64,000 bases of DNA from Prasinococcaceae sp. CCMP 1430. Lineage: Eukaryota > Plantae > Prasinodermophyta. Positions 1-51,500 of this stretch are shown piece after piece. How positions within the stretch are numbered: position 1 is the stretch's first letter; each line of letters starts with the position of its first letter. A model generated the notes under the pieces. It saw only the letters and a list, made by a program, of their open reading frames with translations. It was not told the DNA's origin and searched no databases. Made by a program: the position numbers and the translations under genes. The stretch spans positions 8,585 to 72,584 of the forward strand of contig RQSC01001262.1 in the NCBI GenBank assembly GCA_013416795.1, read 5' to 3'.

Positions 1-52
1 AAGACAGGAGCCTGCAAAGCTCTTAACGGCGGTTCGACTCCGCCCACGGCCT
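1..52 (+). tRNA. trnC: tRNA-Cys(GCA), 5' 19 nt cut off by window edge
   Basis: Anticodon arm with GCA, T-arm GGTTCGACT; full copy at 18730-18800 (-). Confidence 0.9.
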
Positions 53-255
53 TTCTTTCGATCACCCAAACCCTCTTTCAGAAAATCCTGGTGGTCGAGA
101 GAAAGGGTCTTCTAAAAAAAAAACATACTTGACCGCCTTTTCGGAAGCCCTTTTTTCTTGGAAAAGGTTTTTGTTTTTTCTTTCTGACAAGGAAACCCTT
201 CGTCTGACCAACAAAGAAAATCCTTCATCTTTGTTTTTCCTTTGTTTTTTTGTTT

Positions 256-885
256 ATGCCATCTACTCTTCCAATCGCTGGATTCGACCGACTTCTTTCA
301 AAACTTTCTCCTAAGGCAGCCCAAGAACTTGCGGGTGGACCTGGTCTTACCCTTGCCTATGCTCTTCCAACCTCAGTGGACGGAATCCTTCTTCAGGATA
401 CCCACCTTCAGATTCACCTTCGACCAAGTCAGTTGAAGGTTGTTCTTCGGTACCTTCGAGATGAGGAAAGTCTTCAGTACACAACGTTGACTGCGATAAA
501 CGTGGTTGATCGACCAACTGCAGCCCTCCGGTTTGGTGTGGTCTACCAACTCCTTTCCTATACCTTGGAACACCGCCTTCAAGTGATCTGTCTTGTGAAT
601 GACCATGAGTCTCTTCCGAGTGTGGTTGATTTGTATCCGAGTGCCCAATGGTCCGAGTGTGAGAACTGGGATATGTTTGGAATCCATACCTTGGATCACC
701 CAAACCTGTATCGCCTTCTCACAGACTATGGGTTTGAGGGCCATCCCTTGCGAAAGGATTACCCTCTCTCTGGGTTTACTGAGGTTCGATACGACGAAGA
801 CCTTCAACAAGTTGTGAGCACTCCTGTCGAACTCGCTCAGGAATATCGAGTCTTTGATTATGCTTCTCCTTGGAAAACCTTTTGA
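256..885 (+). CDS. nad9: NADH dehydrogenase subunit 9 (IR copy 1)
   Basis: Motifs ECENWDMFG, LLTDYGFEGHPLRKDYPLSG, ELAQEYR; first ATG at 256. Confidence 0.96.
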   Translation: MPSTLPIAGFDRLLSKLSPKAAQELAGGPGLTLAYALPTSVDGILLQDTHLQIHLRPSQLKVVLRYLRDEESLQYTTLTAINVVDRPTAALRFGVVYQLLSYTLEHRLQVICLVNDHESLPSVVDLYPSAQWSECENWDMFGIHTLDHPNLYRLLTDYGFEGHPLRKDYPLSGFTEVRYDEDLQQVVSTPVELAQEYRVFDYASPWKTF

Positions 886-952
886 AAGAGAGAACCCTTC
901 CTGAAAACAACCTTCTCAAAAAGAATTCTTGTATGGTTTTTTCCAAAAAAAA

Positions 953-17881: not shown

Positions 17882-17896
17882 GAAGGGTTCTCTCTT

Positions 17897-18526
17897 TCAA
17901 AAGGTTTTCCAAGGAGAAGCATAATCAAAGACTCGATATTCCTGAGCGAGTTCGACAGGAGTGCTCACAACTTGTTGAAGGTCTTCGTCGTATCGAACCT
18001 CAGTAAACCCAGAGAGAGGGTAATCCTTTCGCAAGGGATGGCCCTCAAACCCATAGTCTGTGAGAAGGCGATACAGGTTTGGGTGATCCAAGGTATGGAT
18101 TCCAAACATATCCCAGTTCTCACACTCGGACCATTGGGCACTCGGATACAAATCAACCACACTCGGAAGAGACTCATGGTCATTCACAAGACAGATCACT
18201 TGAAGGCGGTGTTCCAAGGTATAGGAAAGGAGTTGGTAGACCACACCAAACCGGAGGGCTGCAGTTGGTCGATCAACCACGTTTATCGCAGTCAACGTTG
18301 TGTACTGAAGACTTTCCTCATCTCGAAGGTACCGAAGAACAACCTTCAACTGACTTGGTCGAAGGTGAATCTGAAGGTGGGTATCCTGAAGAAGGATTCC
18401 GTCCACTGAGGTTGGAAGAGCATAGGCAAGGGTAAGACCAGGTCCACCCGCAAGTTCTTGGGCTGCCTTAGGAGAAAGTTTTGAAAGAAGTCGGTCGAAT
18501 CCAGCGATTGGAAGAGTAGATGGCAT
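17897..18526 (-). CDS. nad9: NADH dehydrogenase subunit 9 (IR copy 2)
   Basis: Identical protein to 256-885. Confidence 0.96.
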   Translation of the reverse strand: MPSTLPIAGFDRLLSKLSPKAAQELAGGPGLTLAYALPTSVDGILLQDTHLQIHLRPSQLKVVLRYLRDEESLQYTTLTAINVVDRPTAALRFGVVYQLLSYTLEHRLQVICLVNDHESLPSVVDLYPSAQWSECENWDMFGIHTLDHPNLYRLLTDYGFEGHPLRKDYPLSGFTEVRYDEDLQQVVSTPVELAQEYRVFDYASPWKTF

Positions 18527-18729
18527 AAACAAAAAAACAAAGGAAAAACAAAGATGAAGGATTTTCTTTGTTGGTCAGACGAAGGGTTTCCTTGTCAGAA
18601 AGAAAAAACAAAAACCTTTTCCAAGAAAAAAGGGCTTCCGAAAAGGCGGTCAAGTATGTTTTTTTTTTAGAAGACCCTTTCTCTCGACCACCAGGATTTT
18701 CTGAAAGAGGGTTTGGGTGATCGAAAGAA

Positions 18730-18800
18730 AGGCCGTGGGCGGAGTCGAACCGCCGTTAAGAGCTTTGCAGGCTCCTGTCTTACCCCTGGACCACACGACC
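18730..18800 (-). tRNA. trnC: tRNA-Cys(GCA)
   Basis: Acceptor GGTCGTG/CACGGCC; anticodon loop CTGCAAA. Confidence 0.92.
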
Positions 18801-19032: not shown

Positions 19033-19104
19033 TGGAGTATAGCCAAGTGGTAAGGCATCGGTTTTTGGTACCGACATGCGAAGGTTCGATCCCTTCTACT
19101 CCAG
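19033..19104 (+). tRNA. trnQ: tRNA-Gln(TTG)
   Basis: Acceptor TGGAGTA/TACTCCA; anticodon loop TTTTGGT. Confidence 0.93.
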
Positions 19105-19147
19105 TTTCTTTCCAGAAAGGATACTTCAGATATCTTCTCTTCGATCT

Positions 19148-19534
19148 ATGCCCTCTCTTCGTCAACTTTTGAAGACTGCTCCTCGAATGAAAGCCGAGAA
19201 AAAGTCTACCGTTCCAGCCTTTGAAGGGTCTCCCTTTCGGAAAGGAATCTGTCTGAAGGTGTACGTGATCAAACCAAAGAAACCAAACTCGGCCCAACGA
19301 AAGATCACCAAGGTAAAACTTTCCACAGGAAAGACTGTGTTGGCCTATATTCCAGGGATCTTTCATACCCTTCAGGAACACTCCCACGTTCTTCTTCGAG
19401 GGGGTCGAGTCAAGGACCTTCCAGGAGTGAAATACCATTGCGTCCGAGCAAAGGAAGACTTTCTTCCTGTCTTTGAACGGCGGAAAGGACGGTCGAAGTA
19501 TGGGTGTCCCCACCCAAAGAATTATCGGAAATGA
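19148..19534 (+). CDS. rps12: Ribosomal protein S12
   Basis: [28 protein letters not shown]. Confidence 0.97.
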
Positions 19535-19628
19535 GGGTCCTTCTTTATCTGAAAGATGGAGGGCTTTCTTTGTCTGTCATAGGCAAAGGGTTTTCTTTCT
19601 TTGTCATAAAGGAAGGGTTTCTCGCAAG

Positions 19629-19655
19629 GTTCAGTCTTTCTCTTGCACACACACG
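19629..19655 (+). mobile_element. 3' piece of split group I intron L2500 (5' boundary uncertain)
   Basis: Ends in omega-G (19655) directly before exon 3; GTTCAGTCTTT (19629-19639) can pair with AAAGACGAAC of the 5' piece. Confidence 0.75.
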
Positions 19656-20070
19656 CGATGTCGTCTCCCTGTGTCCTCGTGCTGCAGAAGGTGCGAAGGG
19701 TTCGGCTGTTCGCCGATTAATACAGGACGCGGATGGGTTTAGAACGTCGTAAGACAGTTTGGTTTCTACCTACCGTGAGGGTACACCCTGGACTCAGACT
19801 GAGTCCAGACGTATATGTGAGAAGCTTTCACTCTAGTACGAGAGGACCGAGTGGAACGGACCTCTGGGGTGTCTGTTGTAGTCCCACTGCAAGGCAGAGA
19901 ATCTACGTCCGGAAAGGAGAAGGGCTGAGTGCGTCTGAAGCCCGAAACCAGCTTTGACACGACATATCAGCGCTGGCGGAAGACCACCGCAGAATAGGCA
20001 AACCGTGTGTCTCGGGTACACCGAAAAGCGAGTTTGTACTAAGAAGGCTCTCTACGAGTTTTTAACCCTA
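19656..20070 (+). rRNA. rnl: LSU rRNA exon 3 (E. coli ~2501 to 3' end)
   Basis: CGATGTCG, GGCTGTTCGCC, TTTAGAACGTCGT, sarcin-ricin loop AGTACGAGAGGAC; 3' end approximate. Confidence 0.93.
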
Positions 20071-20378
20071 AGCAAAAATGTATCTTTTCTTTTTCTTTCT
20101 TCCTTTCTCACTCTCTTTTCCCAGGAAAAAAAAAGTCTCTCTATCTTTCAAAAAAAGAAGAAAAAAAGAGATCTCTTGGGATGATCTTTCCATTCTTTTC
20201 ATGATTTATGTCAACCTTTGTGAAACTTTCAGGAACACGGAACAAAACAACCCTTCTTCCTGCGTCTACCGCACCCCTTTCAATGGCCCCTTTGTGGGAT
20301 GCACCCATCCAAGACACAGAAGCCTTTGGAAAAGGAGCCTTCGGACCGATGACTGAAAACCACCGACCGACTCCTTTC

Positions 20379-21536
20379 ATGCGTCGATCAGCCTTGATCA
20401 CTCAACCAGTCTTGAGTGTGGTGAATGATCACGTGAGTGATTACCCGACCCCTTCGAATTTGACCTATATGTGGGGATTCGGATCTCTTGCAGGAATCTG
20501 CCTTGGGATCCAAATTGCAAGTGGAATCTTCCTTGCAATGCATTATACTCCCCACGTGGACCTTGCCTTTTCGAGCGTTGAGCATATTATGCGAGATGTT
20601 GAAGGAGGGTGGTTCCTCCGGTATCTTCACGCAAATGGAGCCGGAATGTTTTTCATCGTCGTCTATATTCATATTCTTCGAGGACTCTATTATGGGTCTT
20701 ACACAAGTCCACGAGAACTCGTGTGGGTTCTTGGGGTTGTCCTCCTTCTTTTGATGATTTTGACAGCCTTTATTGGGTATGTCTTGCCTTGGGGGCAGAT
20801 GTCTCTGTGGGGAGCAACGGTGATTACCAGCCTTGCATCCGTTATTCCAATTGTAGGAAATGACGTTGTTGTCTGGCTGTGGGGAGGGTTTTCCGTGGAT
20901 AACGCAACCTTGAACCGATTCTTTAGCCTTCACTACCTTCTTCCCTTTGTGATTGCTGGACTTTCTATCCTTCACATTGCAGCCCTTCACCAGTATGGGT
21001 CAAACAACCCTGTGGGAGTTCCCTCACACACAGACAAGCATCCTTTGTACCCTCTTTTCTATGTGAAAGACCTTGTGGCCTGGTTGGTCTTTGCAATTAT
21101 TTTCTCTTGCTTTGTCCATTATGCACCCAACTATTTGGGGCATGCGGATAACTACATTCCAGCAAACCCTTTGAGTACCCCTGCACACATTGTTCCAGAG
21201 TTCTACGTCCTTCCTTTTTACGCTGTTCTTCGGTCTATTCCAGACAAACTTCTTGGGGTTGTGGCAATGATTGCAACCTTTGTCTGCCTCGGACTCATGC
21301 CTTGGCTTCATACAGCATCTGTTCGATCAAACGCCTTCCGACCATTGGCAGCAATGGCGTACTGGTCCTTTGTGGCCACCGCCCTTCTTCTTGGATGGAT
21401 TGGTGCGATGCCTGTCGAGTCCCCCTACCTTGAAATCGGTCAAATTTTGACCTTTTACTTCTTTTTCTACTTCCTTGTGCTGACCCCGGTCCTTGGACGC
21501 CTTGAAAACCTCCTTCTTCGATGGAAGGTTCAATGA
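20379..21536 (+). CDS. cob: Apocytochrome b (in-frame ATGs extend to 20208)
   Basis: [34 protein letters not shown]. Confidence 0.98.
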
Positions 21537-21624
21537 AAAAGAAAGGTAGTAGATATATTTTTTATTTATCCTTCAAAGGAAAAGACAGGGAAAAAAGTCT
21601 TTTTTTTGAAAGGATGTTTTTTCT

Positions 21625-21835
21625 GTGTGCGTTCGTCTTTGGGTCGACGACCGTTTTTCTTTTTCAAGAAAAGAAAGACTCTCTCTTCTCTCTTTGTGTG
21701 TGGGTCACCCCACTTCAAAGAAAGGAAGGCGTTGAGTCGTTGAGGAAAGACCACTCTTTCCTGCGGATTGTTCGTTCTGAAGGTTCCCGCATTCTGCCTT
21801 CATCAAAGAAGGTTTCTTCTTTGCCCCGATGTGTG
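21625..21835 (-). mobile_element. 5' piece of split group I intron L2500 with intact catalytic core, no ORF (3' boundary approximate)
   Basis: Follows exon GGCACCU; IGS CAUCGGGGC; P AAUGCGGGAA, Q AAUCCGCAG, R CUCAACGACUC, S AAGAGAGAGUCU; P3 GAAGGC/GCCUUC; 6-bp P7; P8, P9, P9.1 hairpins. Confidence 0.9.
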
Positions 21836-22057
21836 AGGTGCCAAACACTTCCGTCGATTCGAGCTCTCGGGAAGTATAAGCCTGTTATCCCCGGGGTACC
21901 TTTGATCCGTTGAGCGAAGCCCCTTCCACAAGGAAACTCCGGTTCAGTATGATCGACTTTCGTCTCTGCTCGATGTGCCCATCTTACAGTCAAGCAGGCA
22001 TAGGGCATTCTCCCCACTCGCCCGGTTGCCGTCCGGGGTGAGCCTACCTTGCATACA

Positions 22058-22097
<40 letters not shown>

Positions 22098-22388
22098 CTC
22101 CACCATGCACTGTCCACAGGGTGAGAGCGCCGGTGTGTGTGGGTAGTCTCTCACTGATGCGTGTCCTCTAGGCCGCAACCTATGGATACCGCTCCTACCT
22201 AGTCTGCGCACACAGGTCCCGACACTCAATGCAGGGCTTGAGTAAAGGTCCACGGGGTCTTCTCGCCTTACCGTGAGTACCCCGCATCTTCACGGGGACT
22301 TCAATTTCACCGAGTCCATGGTTGAGACAGCTGGCCGGTGGTGACGTGATTCATGCGGGTCGCTACTTATGCGACAAGGAATTTCGCT
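21836..22388 (-). rRNA. rnl: LSU rRNA exon 2 (E. coli ~1932-2500)
   Basis: Starts AGCGAAATTCCTTGTCG; contains GACTGGGGCGG, GGATAACAGGCT; ends GTTTGGCACCT. Confidence 0.95.
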
Positions 22389-22500
22389 CGTTGAATGGAC
22401 GCGCTTTTCCATCTGAAATCTCGACAGTTTTTCCACCGAAAGACTGTCCTCCTTCATTTTCTAAAGGGGCCAATTCCATAAAGGCGGTCTCAAAAAAAAA
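22389..22500 (-). mobile_element. 3' piece of split group I intron L1931 (5' boundary approximate)
   Basis: Omega-G at 22389; AGAUUUCAGAUGG (22409-22421) complements CCACUCUGAAUCU of the 5' piece (P8). Confidence 0.75.
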
Positions 22501-22535
22501 CCGCCCTTGAAAACGGATTTTTCTTGAGAAATCCT

Positions 22536-22664
22536 TGAGCACACACCCTTTCGCTGAAGCTCAGGTATATTCATCCTTTCCCGTACGGTCAACCATGTCT
22601 ATCCTTTCCCATAGGGTCAAGTCTATGTCTTTTTTTCCATATGCTCAAGTATGGACCTCCTTTC
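22536..22664 (-). repeat. 4-5 tandem copies of the ~28-bp repeat pointing toward rnl exon 2
   Basis: Minus strand reads CATACTTGAGCATATGGAAAA / CATAGACTTGACCCTATGGGAAAGG / CATGGTTGACCGTACGGGAAAGG / TATACCTGAGCTTCAGCGAAAGG. Confidence 0.7.
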
Positions 22665-23094
22665 TTAAATAAAAAATTTTATCTCTAAGGGGTCAGAAAA
22701 GTCTGACCAAAGACTTGAGTCTCTTTTTTCTGTGGTGTGTATGATTCAAAAAAAAAAACCTTTCCTTTATGACAAACACATGTTTTCTCGCTCGCAAACA
22801 AGGGAAACCAGACCGGAGAACCCAAAGAAGGAAAGAAGCATCCGCCCCCTCCAAGAAAGCGGTCACTCAAAAGAAGAAAAAACCTCCTGAACCCTCTTCT
22901 TCTTTGGTTTTAATAAGAGTACTATAAAAAACCTGCTGTCTTTCGTTAGCATGTATGATGGAAGACTGAAGGTTTAAGGTTTTCAGTCTTTTTTTTCTTT
23001 CAAAGACTCTTGTGTTTTTTTTACGAATCCTTGAAGATTCAAACAAAACCATTTTGCTTTCTCATTCCGAGTGGAGGGTGGTTTTTTCCCTCTC

Positions 23095-24532
23095 TTTCTG
23101 GTCATCTTCCAAGGGCAGGTTCCCCTACCCTTACCTTGTTACGACTTCACTTCAGTTACTTTTGACAGGGTGGGACAGAGTTCTTTTCTTCCTCGAAAAG
23201 AGAAAAAGAAGGATGTCTGTACTTCACCTGAGAAAAATTTCCAAAGTGTGACGGGCGGTGTGTACAAGGTCCAGGTACGTGTTCACCGCGGCATTCTGAT
23301 CCGCGATTACTCGCAATTCCTCCTTCACGAGGGCGAGTTGCAGCCCCCGATCCGAACTAAGGAAGCCTTTGAGGGTTCTCTCAAGGTTTCCCTTTCGATC
23401 ACCTATTGAAGCTTCCATTGTAGCACAGGTGCAGCCCAACCCATAACGACCATAAGGACTTGACGTCATCCGCGCCTTCCTCCCCCTTCTCGAGGGCAGT
23501 CTTTTCAGTCAGAAAGAATCTGAAAAGGCGGGTTTCGCTCGTTTCTGAAATGAATCATAGGACACAAATCACGAACTGACGACAGCCATGCAGTACGCCT
23601 CATCACCAGAACTGGTGTGATGGAAGGGTTGGTAAGGTTTTGCGCGTATCATCGCATTAAGCCCCATGCTCCACTGCTTGTGTGGACCCCCGTCAATTCC
23701 TTTGAGTTTCAGCGCTGCCGCCGTACTCCCCAGGCGGTGCTCTCCGGCGTACACCTTGATCCCTAAGAATTTTTCAACCCTTAGATGGAGCACAACGTTT
23801 TCAGCTGTGGACTACGAGGGTCTCTAATCCTCTTCGCTCCCCACGCTTTCGTGCGTCAGCGTCGGTGCTGGGCCAGAAAACAGCCTTCGCCCATTGGCCT
23901 TCGACTCGAGATCACTGCATTGCACCGCTTCCTCGAGCCTTCCGTTTTCCTCTCCCAGACCCATGAGTGTGCCTTTCACCGAGCCTTTCCTCGATTCTTC
24001 CAGGGCTTTAACCCGATGAGTGCACCTCCGCCTAGACACCCTTCACGCCCAGTCATTCCGATGAACACTCGCCCCCTTCGTATTACCGCGGCTGCTGGCA
24101 CGAAGTTTGCCGGGGCTTCTCTTTTTTTCCTTCATCATAGGAGAAAGTCTTGAAGTTTACAACAGTGCGCTGTCAACCTCCTTCACGCGGTGTCGCTGCA
24201 TCAGGGTTTCCCCCAGTGTGCAAGATTCTTCACTGCTGCCCTGATTTCAGGTCTGAGCCCTTTTCAGTTCCAGTGTGGCTGATCATACTCTCATACCAGC
24301 GACGGATCATCGGCTAGGATGGGCACAAACCACCTACGACCTAATCCGAAACAGGACCCTCCAAAGGCGGATGCTTCCTTTCCAAACATTCGGGGGACTC
24401 TCTCCCTTGGTTTTTCCTTTGGGTAGTCTTCCTGTCTATTACTCACCCGGACGCCCTGAGCATTGCCCAGTCGACTTGCATGTGTTAGACGCACCGCCAG
24501 CGTTCCATCTGGGCCAGGATCAAACCCGTCCT
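23095..24532 (-). rRNA. rns: SSU rRNA
   Basis: 5' GTTTGATCCTGGC, GTGCCAGCAGCCGCGGTAA, GGAATTGACGG, GTACACACCGCCCGTC, AAGTCGTAACAAGG; ends approximate. Confidence 0.97.
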
Positions 24533-24593
24533 TTCACGAATAGTTCTTTTTTCTGGTTTTTTCTCTTTTCTCCTGTGGTCGGAGAAGAAAGAA

Positions 24594-24715
24594 AGATTCA
24601 GAGTGGACCACATAGAGTCTCTGAGGATCCTACTAGACCTTAAAGGGTCGTTGGTGTCCTGCGGGTGAAGATTCTTTCCCGCATAGAGTGGTCTGTTCGA
24701 AGGCAGCTTTGGTGT
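24594..24715 (-). mobile_element. 5' piece of split group I intron L1931, no ORF (3' boundary approximate)
   Basis: Follows exon CUAAGGU; IGS GCUGCCUU (P1 with U-G, P10 with 3' exon AGC); P4 UGCGG/CCGCA; R CUCAGAGACUC; P3 GACCAC/GUGGUC. Confidence 0.88.
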
Positions 24716-26562
24716 ACCTTAGTACTGTCAGTGATACAGCAGCCATTGGCCCGGTTTTCGATTTCCGGCAAACACCGGTCCTGTACAACGACGGGCATTG
24801 GGCACACGTCAGTCCCTATACGTCGTCTTTCGACTTTGCAGAGACCTGTGGTTTTAATAACCAGTCCCCGGCCACATTTTTCTGCGACTCCAGTCAGACT
24901 GGAGCCCTCCTTCTTGCGAACGTACGGAGTGAATTTGCCGAGTTCCTTAACCATGGGTCTCTCGACGCCTGAGTCTGTTCGACCCGCGCACCAGTGTCGG
25001 TTTAGGTACGGATACAGGGTTTTTGAACTTTTCCTGGACCTTCTTTTCTCAGACCTTTCTTCCCAAAGAAAAAACCTCAAAGAAAGAAAGCCGTCCTTCA
25101 AAAACATCCTCCATCAAAGTGAGACTTCTCTCATCTTCTTAGGATCCGTGTCTTCCACAGATGGTCAACAGTGCTGTGGAACCCGTGCGCATACGGCGAC
25201 GGGGATTGGCTCCCCGAGCCTCGTTACTCATGTCAGCATGCTCACTCCCGAGTCCTCCAGAAAAAGTATCCTTTTTCCTTCAAAGGAACACAGGACGCTC
25301 CGCTACCAGAACGAATCGTTCTCCGTCGTTTCGGTGGTGCCCTTCAGTCCCGAGTATGGTCGGCGCCAAAAAACTCATTCAGTGCGCTGGTACGCGATCA
25401 TCATAGAACGGCTGCTTCCAAGCCCATCTCCTGAATGTCTCTGTTTTCTGACTTCCTTGCGCACTCAGGGCACACTTTGGGACCTTAACGGACGGTCTGG
25501 GCTCTTCCCCTCTCGACCCTGGACCTTCGCGCCCAGAGTCTGTACAGATACCCACCCTTTGTCGGCCTTCGGAGTTTTCTTGGACTTCGTAAAGGTTTGG
25601 GCTCCCGTCATCCAACAAGTGCTCTACCTCCGAAAAGGAGTCTGGGTCTAGTCTACCTACATAGATTTCGCGGAGAACCAGCTATCACCAGGCTTGGTAA
25701 GCCTTTCACTCCTTTCCACCCCTCATCCGAGAATTTTGCCACATTCACCGGTTCGGTCCTCCATCGAAAGACTTTCGACTTCAACCTGGAGATGGAAAGC
25801 TCGCCTGGCTTCGGGTCGTACACCCCCTATACACAGAAAAGAAAGAAAAAACCCTTATCGCATACGCTCAAGAGAAAATCCTTTCTTTGAAAACCAAGAA
25901 AGAAGCCTTTGTAAACTCGGGTTTCCTCCTGCCTCCACCTTTGGGCTCAAGCCTTGGTTTTTTTTTGTACAGGTGAATCTACACTCGCTGACCCATTATG
26001 CAAAAGGTACGCCGTCACCATGTCTGGCTCCGACCGTTTGATGTGCACCAGGATTCAGGTTCTTTTCAAGTCCTCATTCTTCGGAAGAAGTCTTCCGGAT
26101 CGGTTCTTTTCACCCTTCCCTCACGGTACATCCTGCGCTATCGGTTCTTCTAGGTATCCAACCTTCAGAGGGTGGTCCCCCTGTCTTCCATCGGTGTGAT
26201 CCGATGTACTCATTCTTTTCTCTGTCGACCCAGTCTTTCCTGTACAGGGCTTTCACCTTCTTTGGCCCGGGATTCCACCACGGTTCAAGAAAAGAAGAAG
26301 GTCGACCTTCTTTGGGGTTTTTCACCAAAAAAAGAGAGGTTTGGTCCGGGGTCGATCACATCTACTGCCGGAGTCTCGGTTGATCAGTCTTCCTCGGGGT
26401 ACTGAGATGTTTCACTTCCCCCGGTGTTTGTTCTGTCTGAGCTTGTGCTCTTGGGAAATCAAAACTTTGTCGCGGTGTGCTAAAGTTTTGCCTTTCGTTT
26501 TGGTGTACGTCCCTTTCCTAGAAGACCAGGGCATCCCCCTGGTGCATCCTCTCTCTCTACGA
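24716..26562 (-). rRNA. rnl: LSU rRNA exon 1 (5' end to E. coli ~1931)
   Basis: GGATGCCCTGG near 5' end, GAAACATCTCAGTACC, GTACCTTTTGCATAATGG, GAACTCGGCAAA; 5' end approximate. Confidence 0.95.
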
Positions 26563-28003: not shown

Positions 28004-28075
28004 GCTCCCTTCGTCTAGGGGTAAGGACATAACCTTTTCGAGGTTGAAACACGGGTTCGAATCCCGTAGGGAGCA
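28004..28075 (+). tRNA. trnE: tRNA-Glu(TTC)
   Basis: Acceptor GCTCCCT/AGGGAGC; anticodon loop TTTTCGA. Confidence 0.92.
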
Positions 28076-28209
28076 GGAAAGAAAGGAAGTCTTTCTTTTT
28101 TCAGACTCTTTTTTCTGAAAAACTCAGTCTTTTTTCTTGTGTTTCCCTTTCTTTTTCTTTTGTACAGAAAGAAAGCTTCCACCAGTCTCCTTTTTCTTTC
28201 TTTGACTGA

Positions 28210-29202
28210 ATGACACTTCTTACCTTTGTCTTCCAACTTACCCAGATTCTTGGTCTTCTTCTTCCTTTGTTGATTGCGGTTGCCTACCTTACCCTTGCAG
28301 AGCGAAAGATTATGGGGGCCATGCAACGACGAAAGGGGCCGGATGTGGTTGGTCTCTGGGGGCTTTTCCAGCCCCTTGCGGATGCTTTGAAGCTTCTTGT
28401 GAAAGAGGCTGCCCTTCCTACCCTTTCAGATATTCACCTTTTTGTTGCCGCCCCAGTCCTTACCTTTATTTTTGCAATGATGGGGTGGGCTGCTCTTCCT
28501 CTTTCAGAGGATGCTGTTCTTGTGGACCTTGATCTTGGAATTTTGTATATTTTTGCAACAGGGTCTTTGGGGGTGTATGGAATCATTATTGCAGGGTGGG
28601 CATCGAACTCAAAGTATGCCTTTCTTGGAGCCCTCCGATCGACCGCACAGATGGTTTCCTATGAGGTTTCTATTGGACTTATTTTGATTTCCGTCCTTCT
28701 CTGTACAGGGTCTCTTCAAATTGCTTCTATTGTGAAAGCCCAGGAGGAAGTCTGGCTTGTCCTCCCTCTCTTCCCTATTGCTCTTCTTTTCTTCATTTCT
28801 TGTCTTGCGGAAACGAATCGAGCACCCTTTGACCTTCCAGAAGCGGAGGCGGAGTTGGTTGCAGGGTACAACGTTGAATACGGGTCTATGGGGTTTGCCC
28901 TCTTCTTTCTTGGAGAGTATGCAAACATGATTCTCATGTCTGCCCTTCTTGTCCTTCTCTTCCTTGGTGGGTGGCACCCTCCTCTTATGGTCTTTCCTTT
29001 GACCATGATTCCTGGAGGGTTCTGGTATGCAGTCAAAACCCTCTTCCTTCTTCTTGGGTATATTTGGGTTCGAGCCAGTCTTCCTCGATACCGATATGAC
29101 CAACTTATGGCCCTTGGGTGGAAGGTCTTCCTCCCTCTTTCCCTTGGATGGGTCTGTATGTTGAGTGGTCTTCTTCTTGGATTGAACGCTCTTCCAATGT
29201 AA
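28210..29202 (+). CDS. nad1: NADH dehydrogenase subunit 1 (IR copy 1)
   Basis: [37 protein letters not shown]. Confidence 0.98.
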
Positions 29203-29288
29203 ACCTTTCTTTTCCCATATGGTCAAATATGTGTCTTTTTTCCCATACGGTCAAAGAAAGAGAGGGTTTCTTTCAAAGACTGAGACAC

Positions 29289-29361
29289 GGCAGCATGGGC
29301 CAATTGGAAGGCTGCGAGGCTCATGACCTCGAGTGTCCTGGTTCGAATCCAGGTGCTGCTC
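29289..29361 (+). tRNA. trnM: tRNA-Met(CAT), initiator-like anticodon stem
   Basis: Anticodon arm CGAGG-CTCATGA-CCTCG; T-arm CCTGG-TTCGAAT-CCAGG. Confidence 0.85.
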
Positions 29362-29396
29362 TCACCTTCACCCTAGACCACCCACAGATTTTTTGT

Positions 29397-37671: not shown

Positions 37672-37760
37672 AGTGAAAAAAAAAATGGTCTCCAAACCAT
37701 GGTTGGTTTGATTGTGTGCCACCCTCCAAAAAATCTGTGGGTGGTCTAGGGTGAAGGTGA

Positions 37761-37833
37761 GAGCAGCACCTGGATTCGAACCAGGACACTCGAGGTCATG
37801 AGCCTCGCAGCCTTCCAATTGGCCCATGCTGCC
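37761..37833 (-). tRNA. trnM: tRNA-Met(CAT), IR copy
   Basis: Reverse complement of 29289-29361. Confidence 0.85.
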
Positions 37834-37919
37834 GTGTCTCAGTCTTTGAAAGAAACCCTCTCTTTCTTTGACCGTATGGGAAAAAAGACACATATTTGAC
37901 CATATGGGAAAAGAAAGGT

Positions 37920-38912
37920 TTACATTGGAAGAGCGTTCAATCCAAGAAGAAGACCACTCAACATACAGACCCATCCAAGGGAAAGAGGGAGGAAGACCTT
38001 CCACCCAAGGGCCATAAGTTGGTCATATCGGTATCGAGGAAGACTGGCTCGAACCCAAATATACCCAAGAAGAAGGAAGAGGGTTTTGACTGCATACCAG
38101 AACCCTCCAGGAATCATGGTCAAAGGAAAGACCATAAGAGGAGGGTGCCACCCACCAAGGAAGAGAAGGACAAGAAGGGCAGACATGAGAATCATGTTTG
38201 CATACTCTCCAAGAAAGAAGAGGGCAAACCCCATAGACCCGTATTCAACGTTGTACCCTGCAACCAACTCCGCCTCCGCTTCTGGAAGGTCAAAGGGTGC
38301 TCGATTCGTTTCCGCAAGACAAGAAATGAAGAAAAGAAGAGCAATAGGGAAGAGAGGGAGGACAAGCCAGACTTCCTCCTGGGCTTTCACAATAGAAGCA
38401 ATTTGAAGAGACCCTGTACAGAGAAGGACGGAAATCAAAATAAGTCCAATAGAAACCTCATAGGAAACCATCTGTGCGGTCGATCGGAGGGCTCCAAGAA
38501 AGGCATACTTTGAGTTCGATGCCCACCCTGCAATAATGATTCCATACACCCCCAAAGACCCTGTTGCAAAAATATACAAAATTCCAAGATCAAGGTCCAC
38601 AAGAACAGCATCCTCTGAAAGAGGAAGAGCAGCCCACCCCATCATTGCAAAAATAAAGGTAAGGACTGGGGCGGCAACAAAAAGGTGAATATCTGAAAGG
38701 GTAGGAAGGGCAGCCTCTTTCACAAGAAGCTTCAAAGCATCCGCAAGGGGCTGGAAAAGCCCCCAGAGACCAACCACATCCGGCCCCTTTCGTCGTTGCA
38801 TGGCCCCCATAATCTTTCGCTCTGCAAGGGTAAGGTAGGCAACCGCAATCAACAAAGGAAGAAGAAGACCAAGAATCTGGGTAAGTTGGAAGACAAAGGT
38901 AAGAAGTGTCAT
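37920..38912 (-). CDS. nad1: NADH dehydrogenase subunit 1 (IR copy 2)
   Basis: Identical protein to 28210-29202. Confidence 0.98.
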
Positions 38913-39059
38913 TCAGTCAAAGAAAGAAAAAGGAGACTGGTGGAAGCTTTCTTTCTGTACAAAAGAAAAAGAAAGGGAAACACAAGAAAAAAGACTGAGT
39001 TTTTCAGAAAAAAGAGTCTGAAAAAAGAAAGACTTCCTTTCTTTCCTGCTCCCTACGGG

Positions 39060-39278
39060 ATCAATAAACCATCGCTTGTTTGTGAAAATATAAAAAGTCC
39101 GAACACTCTGACTTCGAGTAAGGGCTGCCAGTGCCATCTTTCGAAGGGGACCAAGGTGTACAAGGTAGGCCAAGGTTGCGCCAAGGGTGGTTGCAATCAA
39201 AGGTGCAACCTTCGCTGAAAGCGGAACAAGCTCAGCCTCGAACCCTTGGGTCAGCCCTCCAGCAGCAACCAGAGACCC
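39060..39278. repeat. 219-bp direct copy of an internal nad5 segment (35968-36186) at the mito-nuclear junction
   Basis: ATCAATAAACC...CAGAGACCC identical at offset 3092. Confidence 0.93.
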
Positions 39279-39636
39279 CCCCCGCTGCTCTCAGGCCCGC
39301 CCCGCGCCACCCGCCAACCGTTAGGGTCCAAAATAAAACCCTTAATGAGGTCTTAACCCTAACCCCAACGCCGGGCGGGACCCCCTGCGGCGGCCTTTTT
39401 TTTTGCGCGCGTTTTTCTTCGGTATTTTACGCGGCGAGATTTCGTGAGTTTGCATGTGAATTCGCGGCGTCGTTCCGGAAAAAGGCGGAAAATGCGCGAG
39501 GAAAAAACGAGCGGATAAGACGGCGCTGCGGCGGGGGTGCCACAGGGGCACGCGCTGCGGGCGGGGTGTGTGGGGGGCGAGGGGGGGGGAGGGAGCGAGG
39601 GAGGTGTGAGGGGCGCCCGCCTTTCGCGCGGTGAGG

Positions 39637-42578: not shown

Positions 42579-45500
42579 CTAGTCGCTGAGGTTGAGCAGC
42601 GCGGCGACCCCGCGCAGCGTCCAGTGGTCCTCGTCCTTGTCGCTGGGGACGCGCATGTCCATGACGAAGTTGGAGCTGTGGCCCGTGGTGGCGAGCACGC
42701 CCCGGCGCTCCACCGTGCGGTAGACGGGCATGGCGTAGTGCGGCGCCGGCTGGATGTCCGCGGCCCTCATGGGCACGAGGCGCACGACGGGCATGGCGGA
42801 GAAGAGCACCTTGGCCTCCGACTCGGCGAGCATCATCGTGGACTTGTCGAAGCGCGCGCCCTCCAGGAAGAGGCCGTTGACGTAGGCGCCGTCGTCGGGC
42901 TTCTCCGCGTACGAGTCCTCGGGCATCATCTCGAAGTCCCACGAGCACGTGTCGATGGGGATGGTGTACTTGCGCGCGTAGTTCTGCATGACGCCGGTGA
43001 GGAAGGCCTGCGTGAAGAAGAAGTTGCTCAGGTTGAACATGGGCGGCGCGCCGTTCTCCAGCCACGCGTCCAGCATCGCCAGGCGCTCCATGAGGTTGGC
43101 GAAGTAGGAGCTCAGCGGCTTGAGGCTCGGGTACGACTTCTTGAGCCACAGCTCGGGCGTCCTGTTGTTGTACATGGCGTTGTACACGCCCTCCATCTCG
43201 CTGCTCATCACGCTCAGCCCCTTGAGCGCCTTCTGAACCTCCCTGAGGCTCGAGCGGATGACGCTCGTCAGCCGGTTGAAGCGCACGAGCTCCTGCACCA
43301 GCACCGAGTTCATCGACTCCTCGTACAGCACGGGAAACTTGAAGCGCGCGACCTCGAGGTCGAAGTCGGCCGGCAGGCGGCGCTCGAGGTCGGCCGCGAG
43401 CTCCCCCACGATCGACTCGGGGCTCTGCCCCCCGCCGCCGCTGCTGCTGCCCAGCGTGTTCAGGATGGAGCCGAGCATGAGGTCGACCTCCTGCTGGTCC
43501 TTGGTGATGCTCGCGTTGGCGTGCAGCCCGAACACACCGGGCGTGGGGATCTGCGGCAGCCCGCGGATGAAGCCCAGCACCGACTCGTAGTCGTTCTCGG
43601 GCGGCGCGCGATAGACGTCCGAGTCGGCCGTCAGCCGGTAGTCGGGGTCAGCGTAGATGCGCTCGGTGAAGAAGATGCGCATGATGGCCATGAGCGTGGT
43701 CCTGTCGTGGTCGTCCGTGACGCGCCCGCCGTAGTTGCACTCGCCCACGAGGTACGACAGCGCCTTCAGCGGCACCTCGTCCTGCTCGTTGATGAACATC
43801 TGCAGCTGGCGCATGGAGATCTTGAGGTCGGGGTCGTTGAAGCCATAGGGGATGTTCCAGCCGAGGGGGCCGTACTTCTTGCGCTCCTGCACGAAGGCGT
43901 GGAAGAAGCACAGCCCGAAGAGCAGCGCGCAGAAGGGGCGCACCTTGGTGCCCTCGCAGCCCAGGTAGAACTCGTCCGTCTTGACGGGGTCGGCGATGTA
44001 CGACTGCATGATGTTGGCGCGGAGCCCTGTGGGGGGCTCGTTGGTCATCTTGACGCCGTTCTGCAGAATTGCCACAGGAAAGTGCTCAGACGGGTACGAC
44101 GTGAGCCACAGCCGGAAGTCGGGGTTCGTGTTCTCCGCGGTGATGCCCTCGCAGATGCGCTCTAGCGTGGGCATCCACGACACGGCGAGGTGGCAGTTCT
44201 GCAGCACCACCCAGCCGCCGCTCTCCTGCGCCTCCGAAATGAGCTTGGCGGCGATTGGTCCCTGGCCCTGCCCCAGGCTGATGCTCTCCACCTTCTTCTT
44301 CTCCTGGTCGGCGAAGGCGAGCAGCGCGGTCATCGGGTCCGAGCCCGGCGACAGAACGAACACGAGTGGCGTTATGGCCGTCGAATCGCCGTATGACTGG
44401 GCGAGGTCGAAAGGCGGGGGCTCCACGTACTTTTGGCCGAGCTCCTCCTGCACGTAGGCGTGCACCGCGCTGGTGAGCTTGTCCGGCCGCACCGTGCGAA
44501 GCACCAGGGCGCGCTCGAACGCGTTAAGCGAGCTCTGGAGCGGCTCGGGCAGCGGCACCGTGTGCGGCGACGCGCTGTCGTAAATGCGGAAGAAGGCGTC
44601 GGGATGCTTCGCGAACACCGCGGGGTACTCGGCAAACGCCGGGAAGGCGGCGAGGCGGTTGATCTCACCCCACGCCTTGTCGGACAGCCACGCGGCGGGC
44701 TTGGGCGGCAGCTCCTTGTCGGTTGGGATGCCACCCGTCACGAAGAAGCGGAACAGGTCGGGTGACATCCTGCCCTTGTACACCTCAATGGTCTTGAGCA
44801 GCGTGAACGAGTACAGCAGCTTGTCCTTCTCGAAGAGCGACCTGCAGATCTGGCAGTACAACGAGTACTGGAAGAACGAGTTCAGCGATGCAATGCGCTC
44901 ATTCAAGTCATCGCTCTTGTCGGAGTCCGCGATGGCGTTGACAAAGAGCGCCAGGTACCAAGCCAGCGAGTACTGGTACATTGGCTCGATGTTGGCGAGG
45001 TCGGAGATGTTGAAGAAAAGTTGCGCGCTGTGGAGCGCCACGGGCTCGTAGCGCGCGCGCGTTTCGTCGATGTTCTGCTCGGTCTTGCGCGCCTGCACCT
45101 GCTTGGTGGCGATGTCGTTGGAGAGCGCCTTGGAGCTCGAGATGACGTCAATTGCCGTCTCATCCTCGAGGATGTTACCCTCAGAGCTGGACAGCACGCT
45201 GATGATCTGATCCTCGATCTCCTTGAGCTGTCGGTTGTTCTCGGCGCTCTGCACGACCAGCTCGCGCTTCTGCTCCTCGAGGTCGGGGCGCTCCTTGGCG
45301 ACCACCACGCCGAGTAGCTGTTTGGGGTCGGGGGAAGGGGCGGGGGCCGGGGATGGGGTTGTGTGGGAGGCGTCGCGTCAGTCGCTCGTTCCAAGCCCGG
45401 GGCAGCTGTTTTGGCACGCGGGCGCGCCGAGGAAGGGCCCTAAGGCCTAGCCCCGAATACGAAACCCTCACCTGATCCTGGAGCCCCTCTGGAGTAATCA

Positions 45501-48500: not shown

Positions 48501-51500
48501 CCGCCACGAGCTGAATGTCGACGAGGTTGCGGAAGGTGAGGTCCGCACGGTCGTACCAGCCGCCGTGGTCGCAGAACTGGCGCAGCAGCTCGACGGGCGG
48601 CGACGCGCCGTATGTCTCCAGCGCGGGCATGTTGAGGTCGTCGATGAAGAGGCAGCAGCGCGTGCCGAAGGCTGGGCCGAAAATACCCTTGCGGCGCTTG
48701 TCGAGCTTGGCGTCGATGATGTCCTGGATCATGTTGGCGTTCGTTTGCGCAGAGAAAGTGGAGGAGATGCTCGTCCACTTTGACTTGTCGAGATCATTGT
48801 CCAGCTTGGACTTGATATACACCGTCTTGCCCGTGCCCGTGCCACCCGCGAGGAGCACGTGGCGGTGCGACTTGATGAGGACGTCCAGGACGTAGCTGTA
48901 GCGCACGGTGTCCACCGTCTGTATGATGAGCTCGTGGAAGGGCGTCTCGACCTTGGGTGGTTCGGCGACGATGGTGTCCATCCACGGCACCCACTTGTCC
49001 TGCAGCCGGTCGAACACGTAGTCATAAACGGTGTTCTCCTCGGGAATGGGGAGCGACAGGTCGAAGCCCGGCTTGATCACGTTGACGCCCGGGCCTAGGT
49101 CGACGCTCAGCTTCTCCGGCTGGGCGCAGAGCTCGCGCAGGAACTTGTCGAAGCGCTCGCGGCCGGCGTTGTTGGTCGTGCCGCCGAGCGACCACACCAG
49201 CGAGAAGAGCATCATGCTGTCCACCTGCAGCGCGCTGAGCGCCTCCGGCTCAGCCCCATCCTTGTCGCCGCCGACGTCCTTGCCGTCCGCTCGGCGCTCG
49301 GCGAGCGCCACCAGCATGTTCATGCAGCTCACGGGCAGGTTGATATCCGACGTCGGATTAATCTCCTTGCACTCGCGGCGCACGAAGCGTACGCAGGGCT
49401 CCACGAGCCACAGAAGCAGCGCGTCGATGCGCTCGCGGTGCTCGAGGAGGTTTGCTGGGAGCGTGTTGAGCCAGCTCTGCTTGAGCGGCACCCAGCCTAT
49501 GTTCTGCGGCTCGACGTACACCATGCCGCAGCGGCTGACGGTGGCGGGCGAGGCCACCGCCAGGTCCTGCACCTCGAAGATCATGTTCATCGTGTCGCTC
49601 ATCTGCACGATCTCGCCGGACATCAGGCAGAGCTTCTTGTTGTCGTCGAGCACCGTGTTCATGTTCTCGATCCAGATGGCATCCACGGGCCCGTCGAAGA
49701 TGCACCACTTCCTGTCGGGCGACGTGTCCGTGGCGGCACCGCGGAAGGTCTTTGCGAGCACGCCGTCCTGCCACTCGTGTGACACCGGGTCGAACTCGCC
49801 GTACAGCTGGCCGATGTAGATGCTCTTTGGGTTCATGGTGAGCATGTGCGTCTTCTGCTCTCCCAGCTGGTCGCGATCGCAGAGCTTGCCGAGGGCGCCG
49901 GCGAGCATCTTCAGCATGGACGTCTTGGCGCCGTACGAGAAGCCGACGATCATCAGGCCGTGGCGCACCAGGATCATCTCGTACAACTGGTGGATCTTTG
50001 TCATGAACACCTCGGTCGTTTGCAGGTTGAGCTCCTCGGCGGTGTCGCACAGCGCCCTGTCCATCAGCTCGTAATCCTGCGCGGGCAGTTCGACGCCAGG
50101 GAACAGGTCGCTCAGGATGTTGTTGAACAGCGGAATGTCCTGCTGCAGGAACTTGGGCTCGTTGACGTCCTTGAGAGAGCGAAGCATGAGGATGTCCTCT
50201 TTCTCCTCGGGGAACTTCTGCTTGATCTCGCCGGCGGCGCGCAGCACGGAGATCACCGCGCGCATGCCGTAGTCATAGTGCGTCTGCGAGGACAGCTGCT
50301 CAGAGCAGAGGCGATAGGTCGCCACAAGCTTCCGGGCGAGCGCGCGCGCGTCAAGATAGCCGTTGCTGTACAGCAGGATCTCGGCAATCATCGCGTAGTC
50401 GGGCACCATCATCGCCACGGTGCGGAAGAGCGCCTTCAGGTTGTCTGGCAGCTCCGACCGTCCGGCGTAGCCGGGGTTCATGGTGATGAACTGCGAGCGA
50501 GAGAGCGCAGGGTACGCAGCGGTCAGCAAGACGGCTTGGAGCGGGGTGGGGTGGGATGGGGGGCGATGCCAAAGGCGCAGGAGGAAGCGCGCTCATGCGC
50601 CGCAGGCAACAAGGGGGGGCGGAAGACAGTGGGGGGGGTGGGGGGCACGGCGCGCTCGCGTGGGCTCGCTGCTGCGTACCACAGAGCATGTGTGGCGGAG
50701 CCCGAGGCGCGTCCCCTCGAACTCGAACATGGAGACGCCCTCAGCTTTCGCGCGCTGGATGGTGAGGATCTGCTGGGCGATGACGCTGAGCACCTCCAAG
50801 TCGATGCGGTTGAACTCGTCGAAGCACGCCCACGCGCCGCTGGACGCCAGCCCCTTGAAGAACTTGCCCATCGCCAAGTAGTCGAGGCCGTCTGAGCAGT
50901 TGAAGACCACGCACTGCATGGCCATCGCCTTCGCGAGGTCCTTTGATGCAATGGTTTAGGGTTGGGGTTCATGGTCTGCGTCAGCAACTGAGTCATACAT
51001 TTAAGCTTTGCTGACACGCACCGCACGCACTCCAGCACACCGCACAACACATCACCGCACCACACCGCACCACACACCACCACCTTCGGACCTTGGTTGT
51101 CTCTGTCTTGCCCGTCCCGGCCGGCCCCTCCGGCGCGCCGCCCAGATTGAGATGCAGCGCGCCCATGAGCGTGCGATAGCAGCGGTCGGTGAGCGGCGTG
51201 ATCACCAGGCGGCTGCTGTTGCCCAGGTACTCGTATCCGTATGCCATGCTGCTATTAATCATCTTCACGTTGACGACCTTGTCATCCTCCATGTAGTAGC
51301 GCAGCTGGGACTGCCAGGAGAAGTCGGTGTCGGCGGCGACGCCCTCGTCATGCATCTGCACGACGGTGTCCCTCGCATGCACATCAAGCACGACGAGTGC
51401 GCCGAGCGTCTTGCGCTCGAGCTTGGTGAGCTTGCCCCTCACACGATTCACAATGTCCATGAGATCGGCGTTGGACTTCTCGATGTACGTCTTCAGGGCG

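What the first reader, a model, noticed from the sequence alone, without database searches (positions are those of the whole stretch)
19629..21835. Obligately trans-spliced group I intron at LSU position 2500, halves on opposite strands
Seen: rnl exon 2 (-) ends at GGCACCU (21836) and is followed by a complete group I core (P/Q/R/S, P3, 6-bp P7, P8, P9, P9.1). Exon 3 starts CGAUGUCG at 19656 on the PLUS strand after a G, with cob in between. The IGS CAUCG-GGGC pairs with the 3' exon CGAUG (P10) and the 5' exon (P1). AAAGACGAAC (21631-21640, - strand) and GUUCAGUCUUU (19629-19639, + strand) can form a 10-bp intermolecular helix just after P9.1. Opposite strands make cis-splicing impossible. Established (from memory): two trans-spliced rnl group I introns, broken in L8 and downstream of P9.1, were described in Prasinoderma coloniale mtDNA, so this is rare rather than new.
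Basis: partly seen in the sequence, partly recalled or inferred. Interest (0 to 1): 0.75.

Follow-up and report, generated by a model that had tools for sequence, protein, structure and literature searches.

The report
Known trans-spliced mitochondrial rRNA intron

Summary
A group I core follows on that strand (Rfam Intron_gpI, 51.4 bits against a gathering score of 50). All helices P1-P9.1 check out by coordinate. Exon c starts at C2501 (19656) on the plus strand, right after a G, and cob lies between the halves. This gene layout is the one Pombert et al. 2013 (PMC3873408) described for Prasinoderma coloniale CCMP1220. Their intron Pr.rnl.2 sits at site 2500, is broken after P9.1, and its splicing was shown by RT-PCR and sequencing. 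Three of their five primers match the window exactly.

The window comes from a sister lineage: cob is 94% identical in protein and about 84% in DNA. Nine independent metagenome or run-assembly contigs carry the same opposite-strand layout.

The proposed 10-bp intermolecular helix exists (10 Watson-Crick pairs, one bulged A) but is unproven. Shuffles often give similar helices and a local hairpin competes with it. The CCMP1220-like lineage has two substitutions in its 3' strand, and I could not obtain the partner strand.

An earlier follow-up in this scan reached the same verdict on another piece of this genome. Verdict: already known, low interest.

The parts
21836..22388 (-). rnl exon b (E. 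coli 23S about 1932-2500); the last nucleotide, U2500, is at 21836
   Evidence: Rfam LSU matches at 21802-22297 and 22358-22388. Published primers 2 and 3 lie inside it.
21625..21835 (-). 5' piece of the group I intron (intron nt 1-211). It holds the guide sequence, P1-P9, P9.1 and the tether strand, so the whole catalytic core is on this piece.
   Evidence: Rfam Intron_gpI, 51.4 bits. All pairs verified by coordinate. Co-fold recovers the helices. A 51-nt indel in relatives starts right after nt 211.
21824..21832 (-). Internal guide sequence ACAUCGGGG. G10-G12 pair with exon CCU (U-G wobble at the splice site). A4-G9 pair with exon c nucleotides 19656-19661 (P10).
   Evidence: The same CAUCGGGG guide occurs in cis-spliced site-2500 introns from metagenomes.
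21676..21740 (-). P7, the guanosine-binding helix. Its two strands are 21734-21740 and 21676-21681: 6 bp with C97 bulged. P3' and P8 lie between them.
   Evidence: Matches the conserved segments of the Rfam alignment. Identical in window-like contigs and in the distant relative L049; low-coverage L048 differs.
21642..21652 (-). P9.1, a 4-bp hairpin with a 3-nt loop
21631..21640 (-). Proposed tether strand AAAGACGAAC on the 5' piece
   Evidence: Exact in 13 related contigs. Not significant against shuffles.
19612..19655 (+). 3' piece of the intron. It holds the conserved lead-in, the tether strand (19629-19639), a possible local hairpin (19624-19629 with 19641-19646), a 15-nt tail and the terminal G at 19655.
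   Evidence: The spacer upstream of about 19612 is rearranged in L005.
19656..20049 (+). rnl exon c (E. coli 23S 2501 to the 3' end), between rps12 and cob
   Evidence: Rfam LSU matches at 19656-19760 and 19808-20049. Published primer 1 lies at 19742-19763.
20208..21536 (+). cob, which separates the two intron pieces and converges on the 5' piece

Best explanation
This is the ortholog of Pr.rnl.2, the trans-spliced group I intron at site 2500 of the mitochondrial large-subunit rRNA gene of Prasinoderma coloniale, seen here in a sister lineage.

How it works. One transcript, read from the minus strand, carries rnl a, rns, rnl b and then the 5' intron piece (211 nt). That piece holds the guide sequence and the entire catalytic core, P1 to P9.1. 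A second transcript, read from the plus strand downstream of rps12, carries at most about 44 nt of conserved intron, ending in the terminal G, followed by rnl c.

The two RNAs must associate. The core then cleaves after U2500, which sits in a U-G wobble pair in P1. The terminal G docks in P7, P10 (6 bp) aligns exon c, and the exons are ligated to give a continuous peptidyl-transferase region.

What is shown and what is inferred. The anatomy is shown here. Conservation of the split across lineages is shown here. Exon ligation is shown by RT-PCR and sequencing in the published strain. How the pieces find each other is inferred. The 10-bp helix after P9.1 is one candidate (about 45% in my estimate). 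Broader spacer complementarity, a hairpin-loop contact or protein factors are the alternatives.
For: Exon ends abut exactly at Rfam LSU model positions 2526/2527. Intron_gpI scores above its gathering score. All helices, the U-G wobble, P10 and the terminal G were verified by coordinate, and thermodynamic folding recovers the helices.

A distant relative, L049, keeps P4 through two double compensatory changes. It replaces P5 and P8 with different sequences that still pair at the same positions. Most changes in window-like variants fall in loops L2, L5 and L6 or lengthen P9; a few break single pairs.

The layout is identical to that of Pombert et al. 2013, who showed ligation by RT-PCR and sequencing (PMC3873408). 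Their primers 1-3 match exactly; primer 4 has 1 mismatch and primer 5 has 3.

cob and nad1 fall in the same 90%-identity clusters as the P. coloniale proteins: YP_008999858 at 94% and YP_008999860 at 97%. Nine independent contigs hold both halves on opposite strands with cob between them. The CCMP1220-like contig L008 has the same order: rps12, 3' piece, rnl c, cob.
Against: The Rfam score is only 1.4 bits above threshold. P1 has only 4 bp and P5 only 3 bp.

The tether is not significant against shuffles. Its 3' strand carries two substitutions in L008, G19629 to A and U19635 to C, and the partner strand is unknown.

The mitochondrial part of the window ends at about 39.1-39.3 kb against nuclear-type DNA that encodes a dynein heavy chain. 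This particular copy could therefore be a chimeric join in the assembly or a very recent nuclear insertion of mitochondrial DNA.
Confidence: 0.93

Rival explanations
1. The pieces associate by something other than the 10-bp helix. Candidates are broader complementarity between the purine-rich and pyrimidine-rich spacers, a contact between the loop of a local hairpin on the 3' piece (stem 19624-19629 with 19641-19646) and the 5' tail, P10 together with docking of the terminal G, or nuclear-encoded proteins.
For: Helices of the same size are common in shuffles, and the best co-fold of the peripheral region uses the local hairpin instead. In L008 the change G19629 to A turns a G-U pair into an A-U pair in that hairpin, while U19635 to C falls in its loop. 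Both changes would weaken the 10-bp helix unless compensated.

The whole spacers are more complementary than mononucleotide shuffles: z = -2.9 in the window and z = -4.5 in L008. The wrong-strand control in the window gives z = -0.07. The authors of the 2013 paper also raise accessory factors as a possibility.
Against: The helix sits exactly where conservation ends on both pieces. A 51-nt indel begins 6 nt beyond it, and the spacer upstream of about 19612 is rearranged. It is all Watson-Crick and is exact in 13 contigs for the 5' strand and 10 for the 3' strand. Mononucleotide shuffles overstate significance for sequences this low in complexity.
Confidence: 0.45
2. The copy in this window is not the expressed mitochondrial gene. 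It would instead be mitochondrial DNA joined to nuclear DNA, either by an assembly chimera or by a very recent nuclear insertion. The intron biology would then belong to the true mitochondrial genome, which has the same sequence.
For: GC content jumps from about 45% to 62-70% at about 39.3 kb. A dynein heavy chain gene lies at 42582-56032. The second repeat copy is cut off at 39061, and a short telomere-like motif lies at the junction.
Against: The long mitochondrial ORFs appear open. Repeat copies within the window are 100% identical. Independent contigs are 99.3-99.9% identical to it.
Confidence: 0.4
3. The rRNA is never ligated. The pieces work as a fragmented rRNA held together by base pairing, as in some other algal mitochondria, and the intron halves are relics.
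For: I have no RNA data for this lineage.
Against: RT-PCR products spanning both junctions were obtained and sequenced in the sister strain. The guide sequence, P7, the conserved junction segments and the terminal G are exact in every window-like contig that holds them (13 with the 5' segment, 10 with the 3'), while neighbouring spacers change.
Confidence: 0.03
4. Splicing happens in cis, from a very long minus-strand transcript. It would run from exon b through the single-copy region into the other inverted-repeat copy, where exon c is in the sense orientation about 22.7 kb downstream.
For: Window positions 1-900 are the reverse complement of 17882-18781. The published genome has rnl inside a 14.4-kb inverted repeat.
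Against: It would need a transcript of at least 22.7 kb that is antisense to cob and rps12. The two intron parts would still have to find each other through the same contacts. The distance is my own calculation and was not checked on sequence to the left of the window.
Confidence: 0.02

Closest known systems
Pr.rnl.2, the trans-spliced group I intron of Prasinoderma coloniale CCMP1220 mtDNA (GenBank KF387569; Pombert et al. 2013, PMC3873408)
   Same: Same gene, same insertion site (2500-2501) and same break point after P9.1. Neither has an ORF. The gene order and strands are the same, and RT-PCR primers 1-3 match exactly.
   Different: The lineage differs: cob is 94% identical in protein and about 84% in DNA; rnl c together with the 3' piece is about 90% identical. 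In the CCMP1220-like contig L008 the last 13 intron nucleotides and two bases of the tether strand differ, and the spacers hold different repeats.
Cis-spliced group I introns at LSU site 2500 (classed IB4 in the 2013 paper), for example Nephroselmis olivacea mitochondrial rnl intron 2, and the metagenome examples L014, L016/L021 and L020
   Same: Same insertion site and the same CAUCGGGG guide sequence. The segments that form P7 and the junction before it are similar.
   Different: These are continuous, and some encode LAGLIDADG endonucleases according to the paper. The metagenome examples are only 129-241 nt long and have a short tail after P9 in place of P9.1 and a break.
[quoted passage not shown]
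   Same: A two-piece group I intron assembled at the RNA level in a mitochondrion.
   Different: These are in a different gene. Their break lies in a loop inside the fold, so each piece carries part of the structure. Here the 5' piece carries the whole core, and the 3' piece supplies only a short tail with the terminal G.
Engineered trans-splicing group I ribozymes (reviewed in PMC6155759)
   Same: A ribozyme on one RNA recognises a second RNA by base pairing and joins the exons.
   Different: In the engineered versions the ribozyme carries the 3' exon and attacks a substrate that supplies the 5' exon. Here the ribozyme is attached to the 5' exon and recruits the 3' exon.

Membership tests
Group I intron (Rfam RF00028) | Score at or above the curated gathering score of the covariance model | tested here: met
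   51.4 bits against 50, E = 3.8e-10, model positions 1-253. The margin is small.
Group I intron (Rfam RF00028) | Core helices P3-P8, including P7 with a G-C pair at the guanosine-binding site and a bulged nucleotide | tested here: met
   All pairs verified by coordinate. Folding recovers P2-P6, P8 and P9. P4, P5 and P8 are kept through changes on both sides in L049.
Group I intron (Rfam RF00028) | U-G wobble at the 5' splice site in P1, a terminal G, and P10 with the 3' exon | tested here: met
   U(21836) pairs with G10. G19655 precedes exon c. P10 has 6 bp.
Group I intron (Rfam RF00028) | Self-splicing or splicing activity | not testable with these tools
   Ligated rRNA was shown by RT-PCR only in strain CCMP1220.
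Ortholog of Pr.rnl.2 (P. coloniale) | Insertion between 23S positions 2500 and 2501 | tested here: met
   Exon ends fall at Rfam LSU model positions 2526/2527, which correspond to U2500/C2501.
Ortholog of Pr.rnl.2 (P. coloniale) | rnl a and rnl b separated by rns on one strand; rnl c on the other strand between rps12 and cob | tested here: met
   Searches compared with the paper's text.
Ortholog of Pr.rnl.2 (P. coloniale) | Break between P9.1 and the 3' end, with no intron ORF | tested here: met
   The 5' piece ends after P9.1 plus about 17 nt, and the 3' piece has at most 44 conserved nt. The region's only long ORFs are on either strand across rRNA and intron sequence, with no Pfam family recorded for those called.
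Ortholog of Pr.rnl.2 (P. coloniale) | Sequence identity to GenBank KF387569 across the intron | tested here: inconclusive
   KF387569 is not held in any collection I could read. The CCMP1220-like contig L008 covers only the 3' piece (about 90% identity together with rnl c).
Subgroup IB4 | [quoted passage not shown] | not testable with these tools
   The subgroup is taken from the paper; no subgroup models were available.
Trans-spliced intron | The halves are transcribed separately and a ligated mature RNA exists | not testable with these tools
   Opposite strands are shown in the window and in nine contigs. Separate transcripts and ligation were not tested in this lineage.

The most novel reading that the evidence does not exclude
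The 3' transcript is recruited by a 10-bp helix formed just after P9.1, acting together with P10. This would make the intron a natural two-RNA ribozyme: the 5' transcript carries the complete catalyst and the 3' transcript supplies only a tether, a 15-nt tail and the terminal G. The main text of the 2013 paper does not mention this helix; I could not see its figures. The split layout is shared by at least two Prasinoderma lineages whose cob genes differ by about 16% in DNA. A third lineage (L049) may share it too. The two substitutions in the tether strand of the CCMP1220-like lineage give a ready covariation test.
Probability: 0.4. Interest if true: 0.3.

Novelty: already known. Interest (0 to 1): 0.12.

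Why it matters
[quoted passage not shown] It was published in 2013 with RNA proof, so finding it again adds little.

- The split is conserved in a sister lineage and in ocean metagenomes.
- The functional intron is bounded to 211 nt on the 5' piece plus at most 44 nt on the 3' piece.
- The core is supported by covariation with a more distant relative.
- There is a clear, cheap test of how the two RNAs pair.

Tried and rejected

2. Getting the CCMP1220-type 5' piece for a covariation test of the tether.
- The cob cluster gave L008, which stops 205 nt past cob inside spacer repeats.
- A metagenome pattern scan for exon end plus guide sequence returned only window-like Prasinoderma contigs, cis-spliced site-2500 introns and chance matches.
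- An 18-mer from the intron core found only chance matches in the viral and prokaryote collections.
- A protein search with the spurious ORF antisense to the intron found only L048 (window-like, low coverage) and L049 (a distant lineage).
- I ran no further search on this.

3. Thermodynamics of the tether. Duplex and co-fold predictions are dominated by low-complexity GAAAG/CUUUC runs and do not single out the helix.

4. Rfam. Two Rfam calls on several loci at once failed internally. On L049 alone Rfam reports only LSU rRNA and no group I match, probably because of large inserts in P6 and P9.

5. Wrap-around. I rejected the idea that the window is the published 54.5-kb circle wrapped around. 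There is no 14-kb repeat inside the window, and the last 25 kb is nuclear-type DNA.

Full report
WHAT THE WINDOW IS. Positions 1 to about 39,200 have 43-49% GC. They carry 24 tRNA genes, one SSU rRNA gene, a three-piece LSU rRNA gene and mitochondrial protein genes. From about 39,300 onward GC is 62-70%, and a dynein heavy chain gene occupies 42582-56032 on the minus strand, so this part is nuclear-type DNA.

The LSU pieces are:
- rnl a, 24609-26561 (minus strand)
- rnl b, 21836-22388 (minus strand), with rns (23097-24535, minus strand) between a and b
- rnl c, 19656-20049 (plus strand), lying between rps12 (19076-19534) and cob (20208-21536)

CHECKING THE OBSERVATION. Exon b ends ...UUUGGCACCU, with the final U at 21836 (Rfam LSU model position 2526, E. 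coli U2500). Exon c begins CGAUGUCG at 19656 (model position 2527, C2501), directly after G19655. The exons therefore abut to the nucleotide.

Rfam's group I model matches 21655-21888 on the minus strand at 51.4 bits, just above its gathering score of 50. I numbered the intron from 21835 and checked every proposed pair by script:
- P1: exon CCU plus C1 pairs with G9-G12, with a U-G wobble at the splice site
- P2: 7 bp
- P3: 7 bp with one bulge
- P4: 5 bp
- P5: 3 bp
- P6: 7 bp
- P7: 6 bp with C97 bulged and the G98-C159 pair
- P8: 9 + 5 bp, closed by a GUGA loop
- P9: 7 bp, closed by a GAAA loop
- P9.1: 4 bp
- P10: 6 bp between intron nt 4-9 and exon c 19656-19661

An unconstrained two-strand fold recovers P2, P3, P4, P5, P6, P8 and P9.

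IT IS THE PUBLISHED INTRON. [quoted passage not shown] Pr.rnl.2 sits at 2500-2501 and is broken between P9.1 and the 3' end. RT-PCR with sequencing of the products showed a contiguous rRNA. That is the layout seen here.

Their primers 1, 2 and 3 occur exactly once each in the window, at the expected places and orientations: 19742-19763 (minus), 21929-21950 (minus) and 22299-22320 (plus). Primer 4 has one mismatch and primer 5 has three. The tRNA set also fits their gene table, including trnL(caa), trnR(ucg) and trnT(ggu).

WHICH LINEAGE. The window's cob and nad1 fall in the same 90%-identity clusters as the P. coloniale proteins (YP_008999858/AGW52205 and YP_008999860). They are 94% and 97% identical, not 100%. 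An ENA contig, L008, encodes a cob that matches the CCMP1220 protein at 436 of 438 residues. L008 is only 84% identical to the window in cob DNA, and 90% in rnl c together with the 3' intron piece.

The window is therefore a sister lineage of the published strain. The nuclear-type flank, at about 69-70% GC, is in line with the 69.8% reported for P. coloniale CCMP1413 (PMC7455551). I cannot name the strain.

CONSERVATION OF THE SPLIT. Nine independent contigs, from Tara and JGI metagenomes and Logan run assemblies, are 96.5-99.9% identical to the window. All hold both intron pieces on opposite strands with cob between them. L008 shows the same order (rps12, 3' piece, rnl c, cob) in the CCMP1220-like lineage.

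In the window-like contigs most substitutions fall in loops L2, L5 and L6, or turn a C-A mismatch into U163-A182, which lengthens P9. A few break single terminal or distal pairs: G35, G80, G123 and G126.

A more distant contig, L049, has an rnl b-like exon followed by a 5' intron piece. It shares the guide sequence and the segment that forms P7 and P3'. P4 is kept through two double compensatory changes (G-C to A-U, twice). P5 and P8 are replaced by different sequences that still pair. P6 and P9 are much enlarged. No exon c follows within the remaining sequence after P7 (about 140 nt). This gives support for the fold that does not depend on the marginal Rfam score.

BOUNDS OF THE FUNCTIONAL INTRON. 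On the 5' piece, several relatives carry a 51-nt insertion immediately after intron nt 211 (window 21625). That is 6 nt beyond the proposed tether strand. On the 3' piece, the spacer upstream of about 19612 is rearranged in L005, while everything from there to exon c is exact in 10 contigs. The 5' transcript therefore carries the whole catalyst, and the 3' transcript contributes at most 44 nt.

THE 10-BP HELIX. AAAGACGAAC (21640-21631, minus strand) and GUUCAGUCUUU (19629-19639, plus strand) do form 10 Watson-Crick pairs with A19633 bulged, at -8.0 kcal/mol for the isolated duplex. Its position is attractive: directly after P9.1, at both conservation boundaries, and 16 nt before the terminal G.

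The helix is not established, for four reasons:
- The spacers are low in complexity. With dinucleotide-preserving shuffles, a helix of at least 10 bp in the same restricted zone arises in 397 of 2000 trials with G-U pairs allowed, and in 34 of 2000 with Watson-Crick pairs only. Anywhere in the two spacers it arises in 493 of 500 and 125 of 500 trials respectively.
- The best co-fold of the peripheral region instead uses a local hairpin on the 3' piece (19624-19629 with 19641-19646). The tether solution lies 1 kcal/mol higher.
- Both strands are invariant within the window-like lineage, so there is no covariation there.
- In L008 the 3' strand reads AUUCAGCCUUU. G19629 to A would break the pair with C205 but turns a G-U pair into an A-U pair in the local hairpin. 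U19635 to C would break the pair with A200 but lies in the hairpin loop.

Whether the CCMP1220 5' piece compensates (AAAGGCGAAU) is the decisive point. I could not obtain that sequence.

As a weaker hint, the whole spacers of the two transcripts are more complementary than mononucleotide shuffles. The z-score is -2.9 in the window, against -0.07 for the wrong-strand control, and -4.5 in L008, where palindromic repeat units of about 20 nt occur in both spacers. The paper also notes repeats shared by the two intergenic regions. The paper's main text describes the break only as lying between P9.1 and the 3' end and does not mention such a helix. I could not see its figures.

CAVEATS.
- 'Cis-splicing impossible' is true within one repeat copy. 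Window 1-900 is the reverse complement of 17882-18781, and the published genome has rnl inside a 14.4-kb inverted repeat. The other copy would therefore place exon c on the same strand roughly 22.7 kb downstream. That figure is my own calculation and was not checked on sequence to the left of the window.
- The second repeat copy is cut off at 39061 and the sequence then runs into nuclear-type DNA past a short telomere-like motif. This copy may sit in a chimeric scaffold or be a very recent nuclear insertion. The long mitochondrial ORFs appear open, and independent contigs are 99.3-99.9% identical, so the sequence represents the mitochondrial genome either way.

EARLIER NOTES IN THIS SCAN. A follow-up agent working on another piece of the same genome also identified this as the published Prasinoderma intron. 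Another noted mitochondrial DNA flanked by nuclear-type sequence. I reached the identification independently, from the paper and its primers, before reading those notes.

VERDICT. Interest is low. The only open point is how the two RNAs associate.

Noticed in passing
window 39062-39400: Mitochondrial-type DNA (45% GC) changes to nuclear-type DNA (62-70% GC) here. The second copy of the nad1-trnM repeat stops at 39061 inside trnE. A short telomere-like motif (AACCCTAACCCC, with TTAGGG nearby) lies at about 39320-39370. This is either an assembly chimera or a very recent, large nuclear insertion of mitochondrial DNA.
   Followed up: partly
window 42582-56032 (-): Three long ORFs together encode a dynein heavy chain (Pfam DHC_N2, AAA_6, AAA_7, AAA_8, MT, AAA_9, Dynein_heavy and Dynein_C). 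At 62-64% GC, this stretch is lower than the roughly 69-70% of its flanks.
   Followed up: partly
window 1-900 with 17882-18781, and 28061-29395 with 37727-39061: Two inverted-repeat pairs, each 100% identical. They do not reproduce the published 14,364-bp repeat. Either the repeat is only partly represented in this scaffold or it is arranged differently in this lineage.
   Followed up: partly
window 20208-21536 compared with P0004 and L008: The window's cob is only 94% identical in protein, and about 84% in DNA, to the cob of P. coloniale CCMP1220. Most protein differences lie in a variable N-terminal extension of about 47 residues. This suggests clearly separate, possibly species-level, lineages within Prasinoderma.
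   Followed up: partly
L016:1637-1765 and L021 (same sequence); L014; L020: Cis-spliced introns at LSU site 2500 in AT-rich metagenome contigs, with the same CAUCGGGG guide sequence but only 129 nt (L016/L021), 223 nt (L020) and 241 nt (L014) long. The 129-nt one seems to lack P9 altogether, which is very small for a group I intron.
   Followed up: no
L049:1-400 (-): A third, more distant lineage with an rnl b-like exon and a site-2500 5' intron piece. P6 and P9 are greatly enlarged, and no exon c follows in the remaining sequence after P7 (about 140 nt), so it may also be split. Non-rRNA sequence precedes the start of the exon, as at site 1931 in Prasinoderma.
   Followed up: partly
L008:60-240 and L008:2300-2490: In the CCMP1220-like lineage both spacers next to the intron pieces are filled with near-palindromic repeat units of about 20 nt (GCGAAGAGGTTCTTCTCGAG type). 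The contig breaks inside them. They probably correspond to the dispersed repeats the 2013 paper reports near the break points.
   Followed up: partly
window 19761-19807: About 47 nt inserted in rnl c between Rfam LSU model positions 2632 and 2653. It looks like a lineage-specific expansion (a hairpin GGACUCAGACUGAGUCC) rather than an intron.
   Followed up: no
window 22389-24608: The other trans-spliced intron, Pr.rnl.1 at site 1931, has rns between its halves on the same strand. It is covered by a separate finding in this scan.
   Followed up: no
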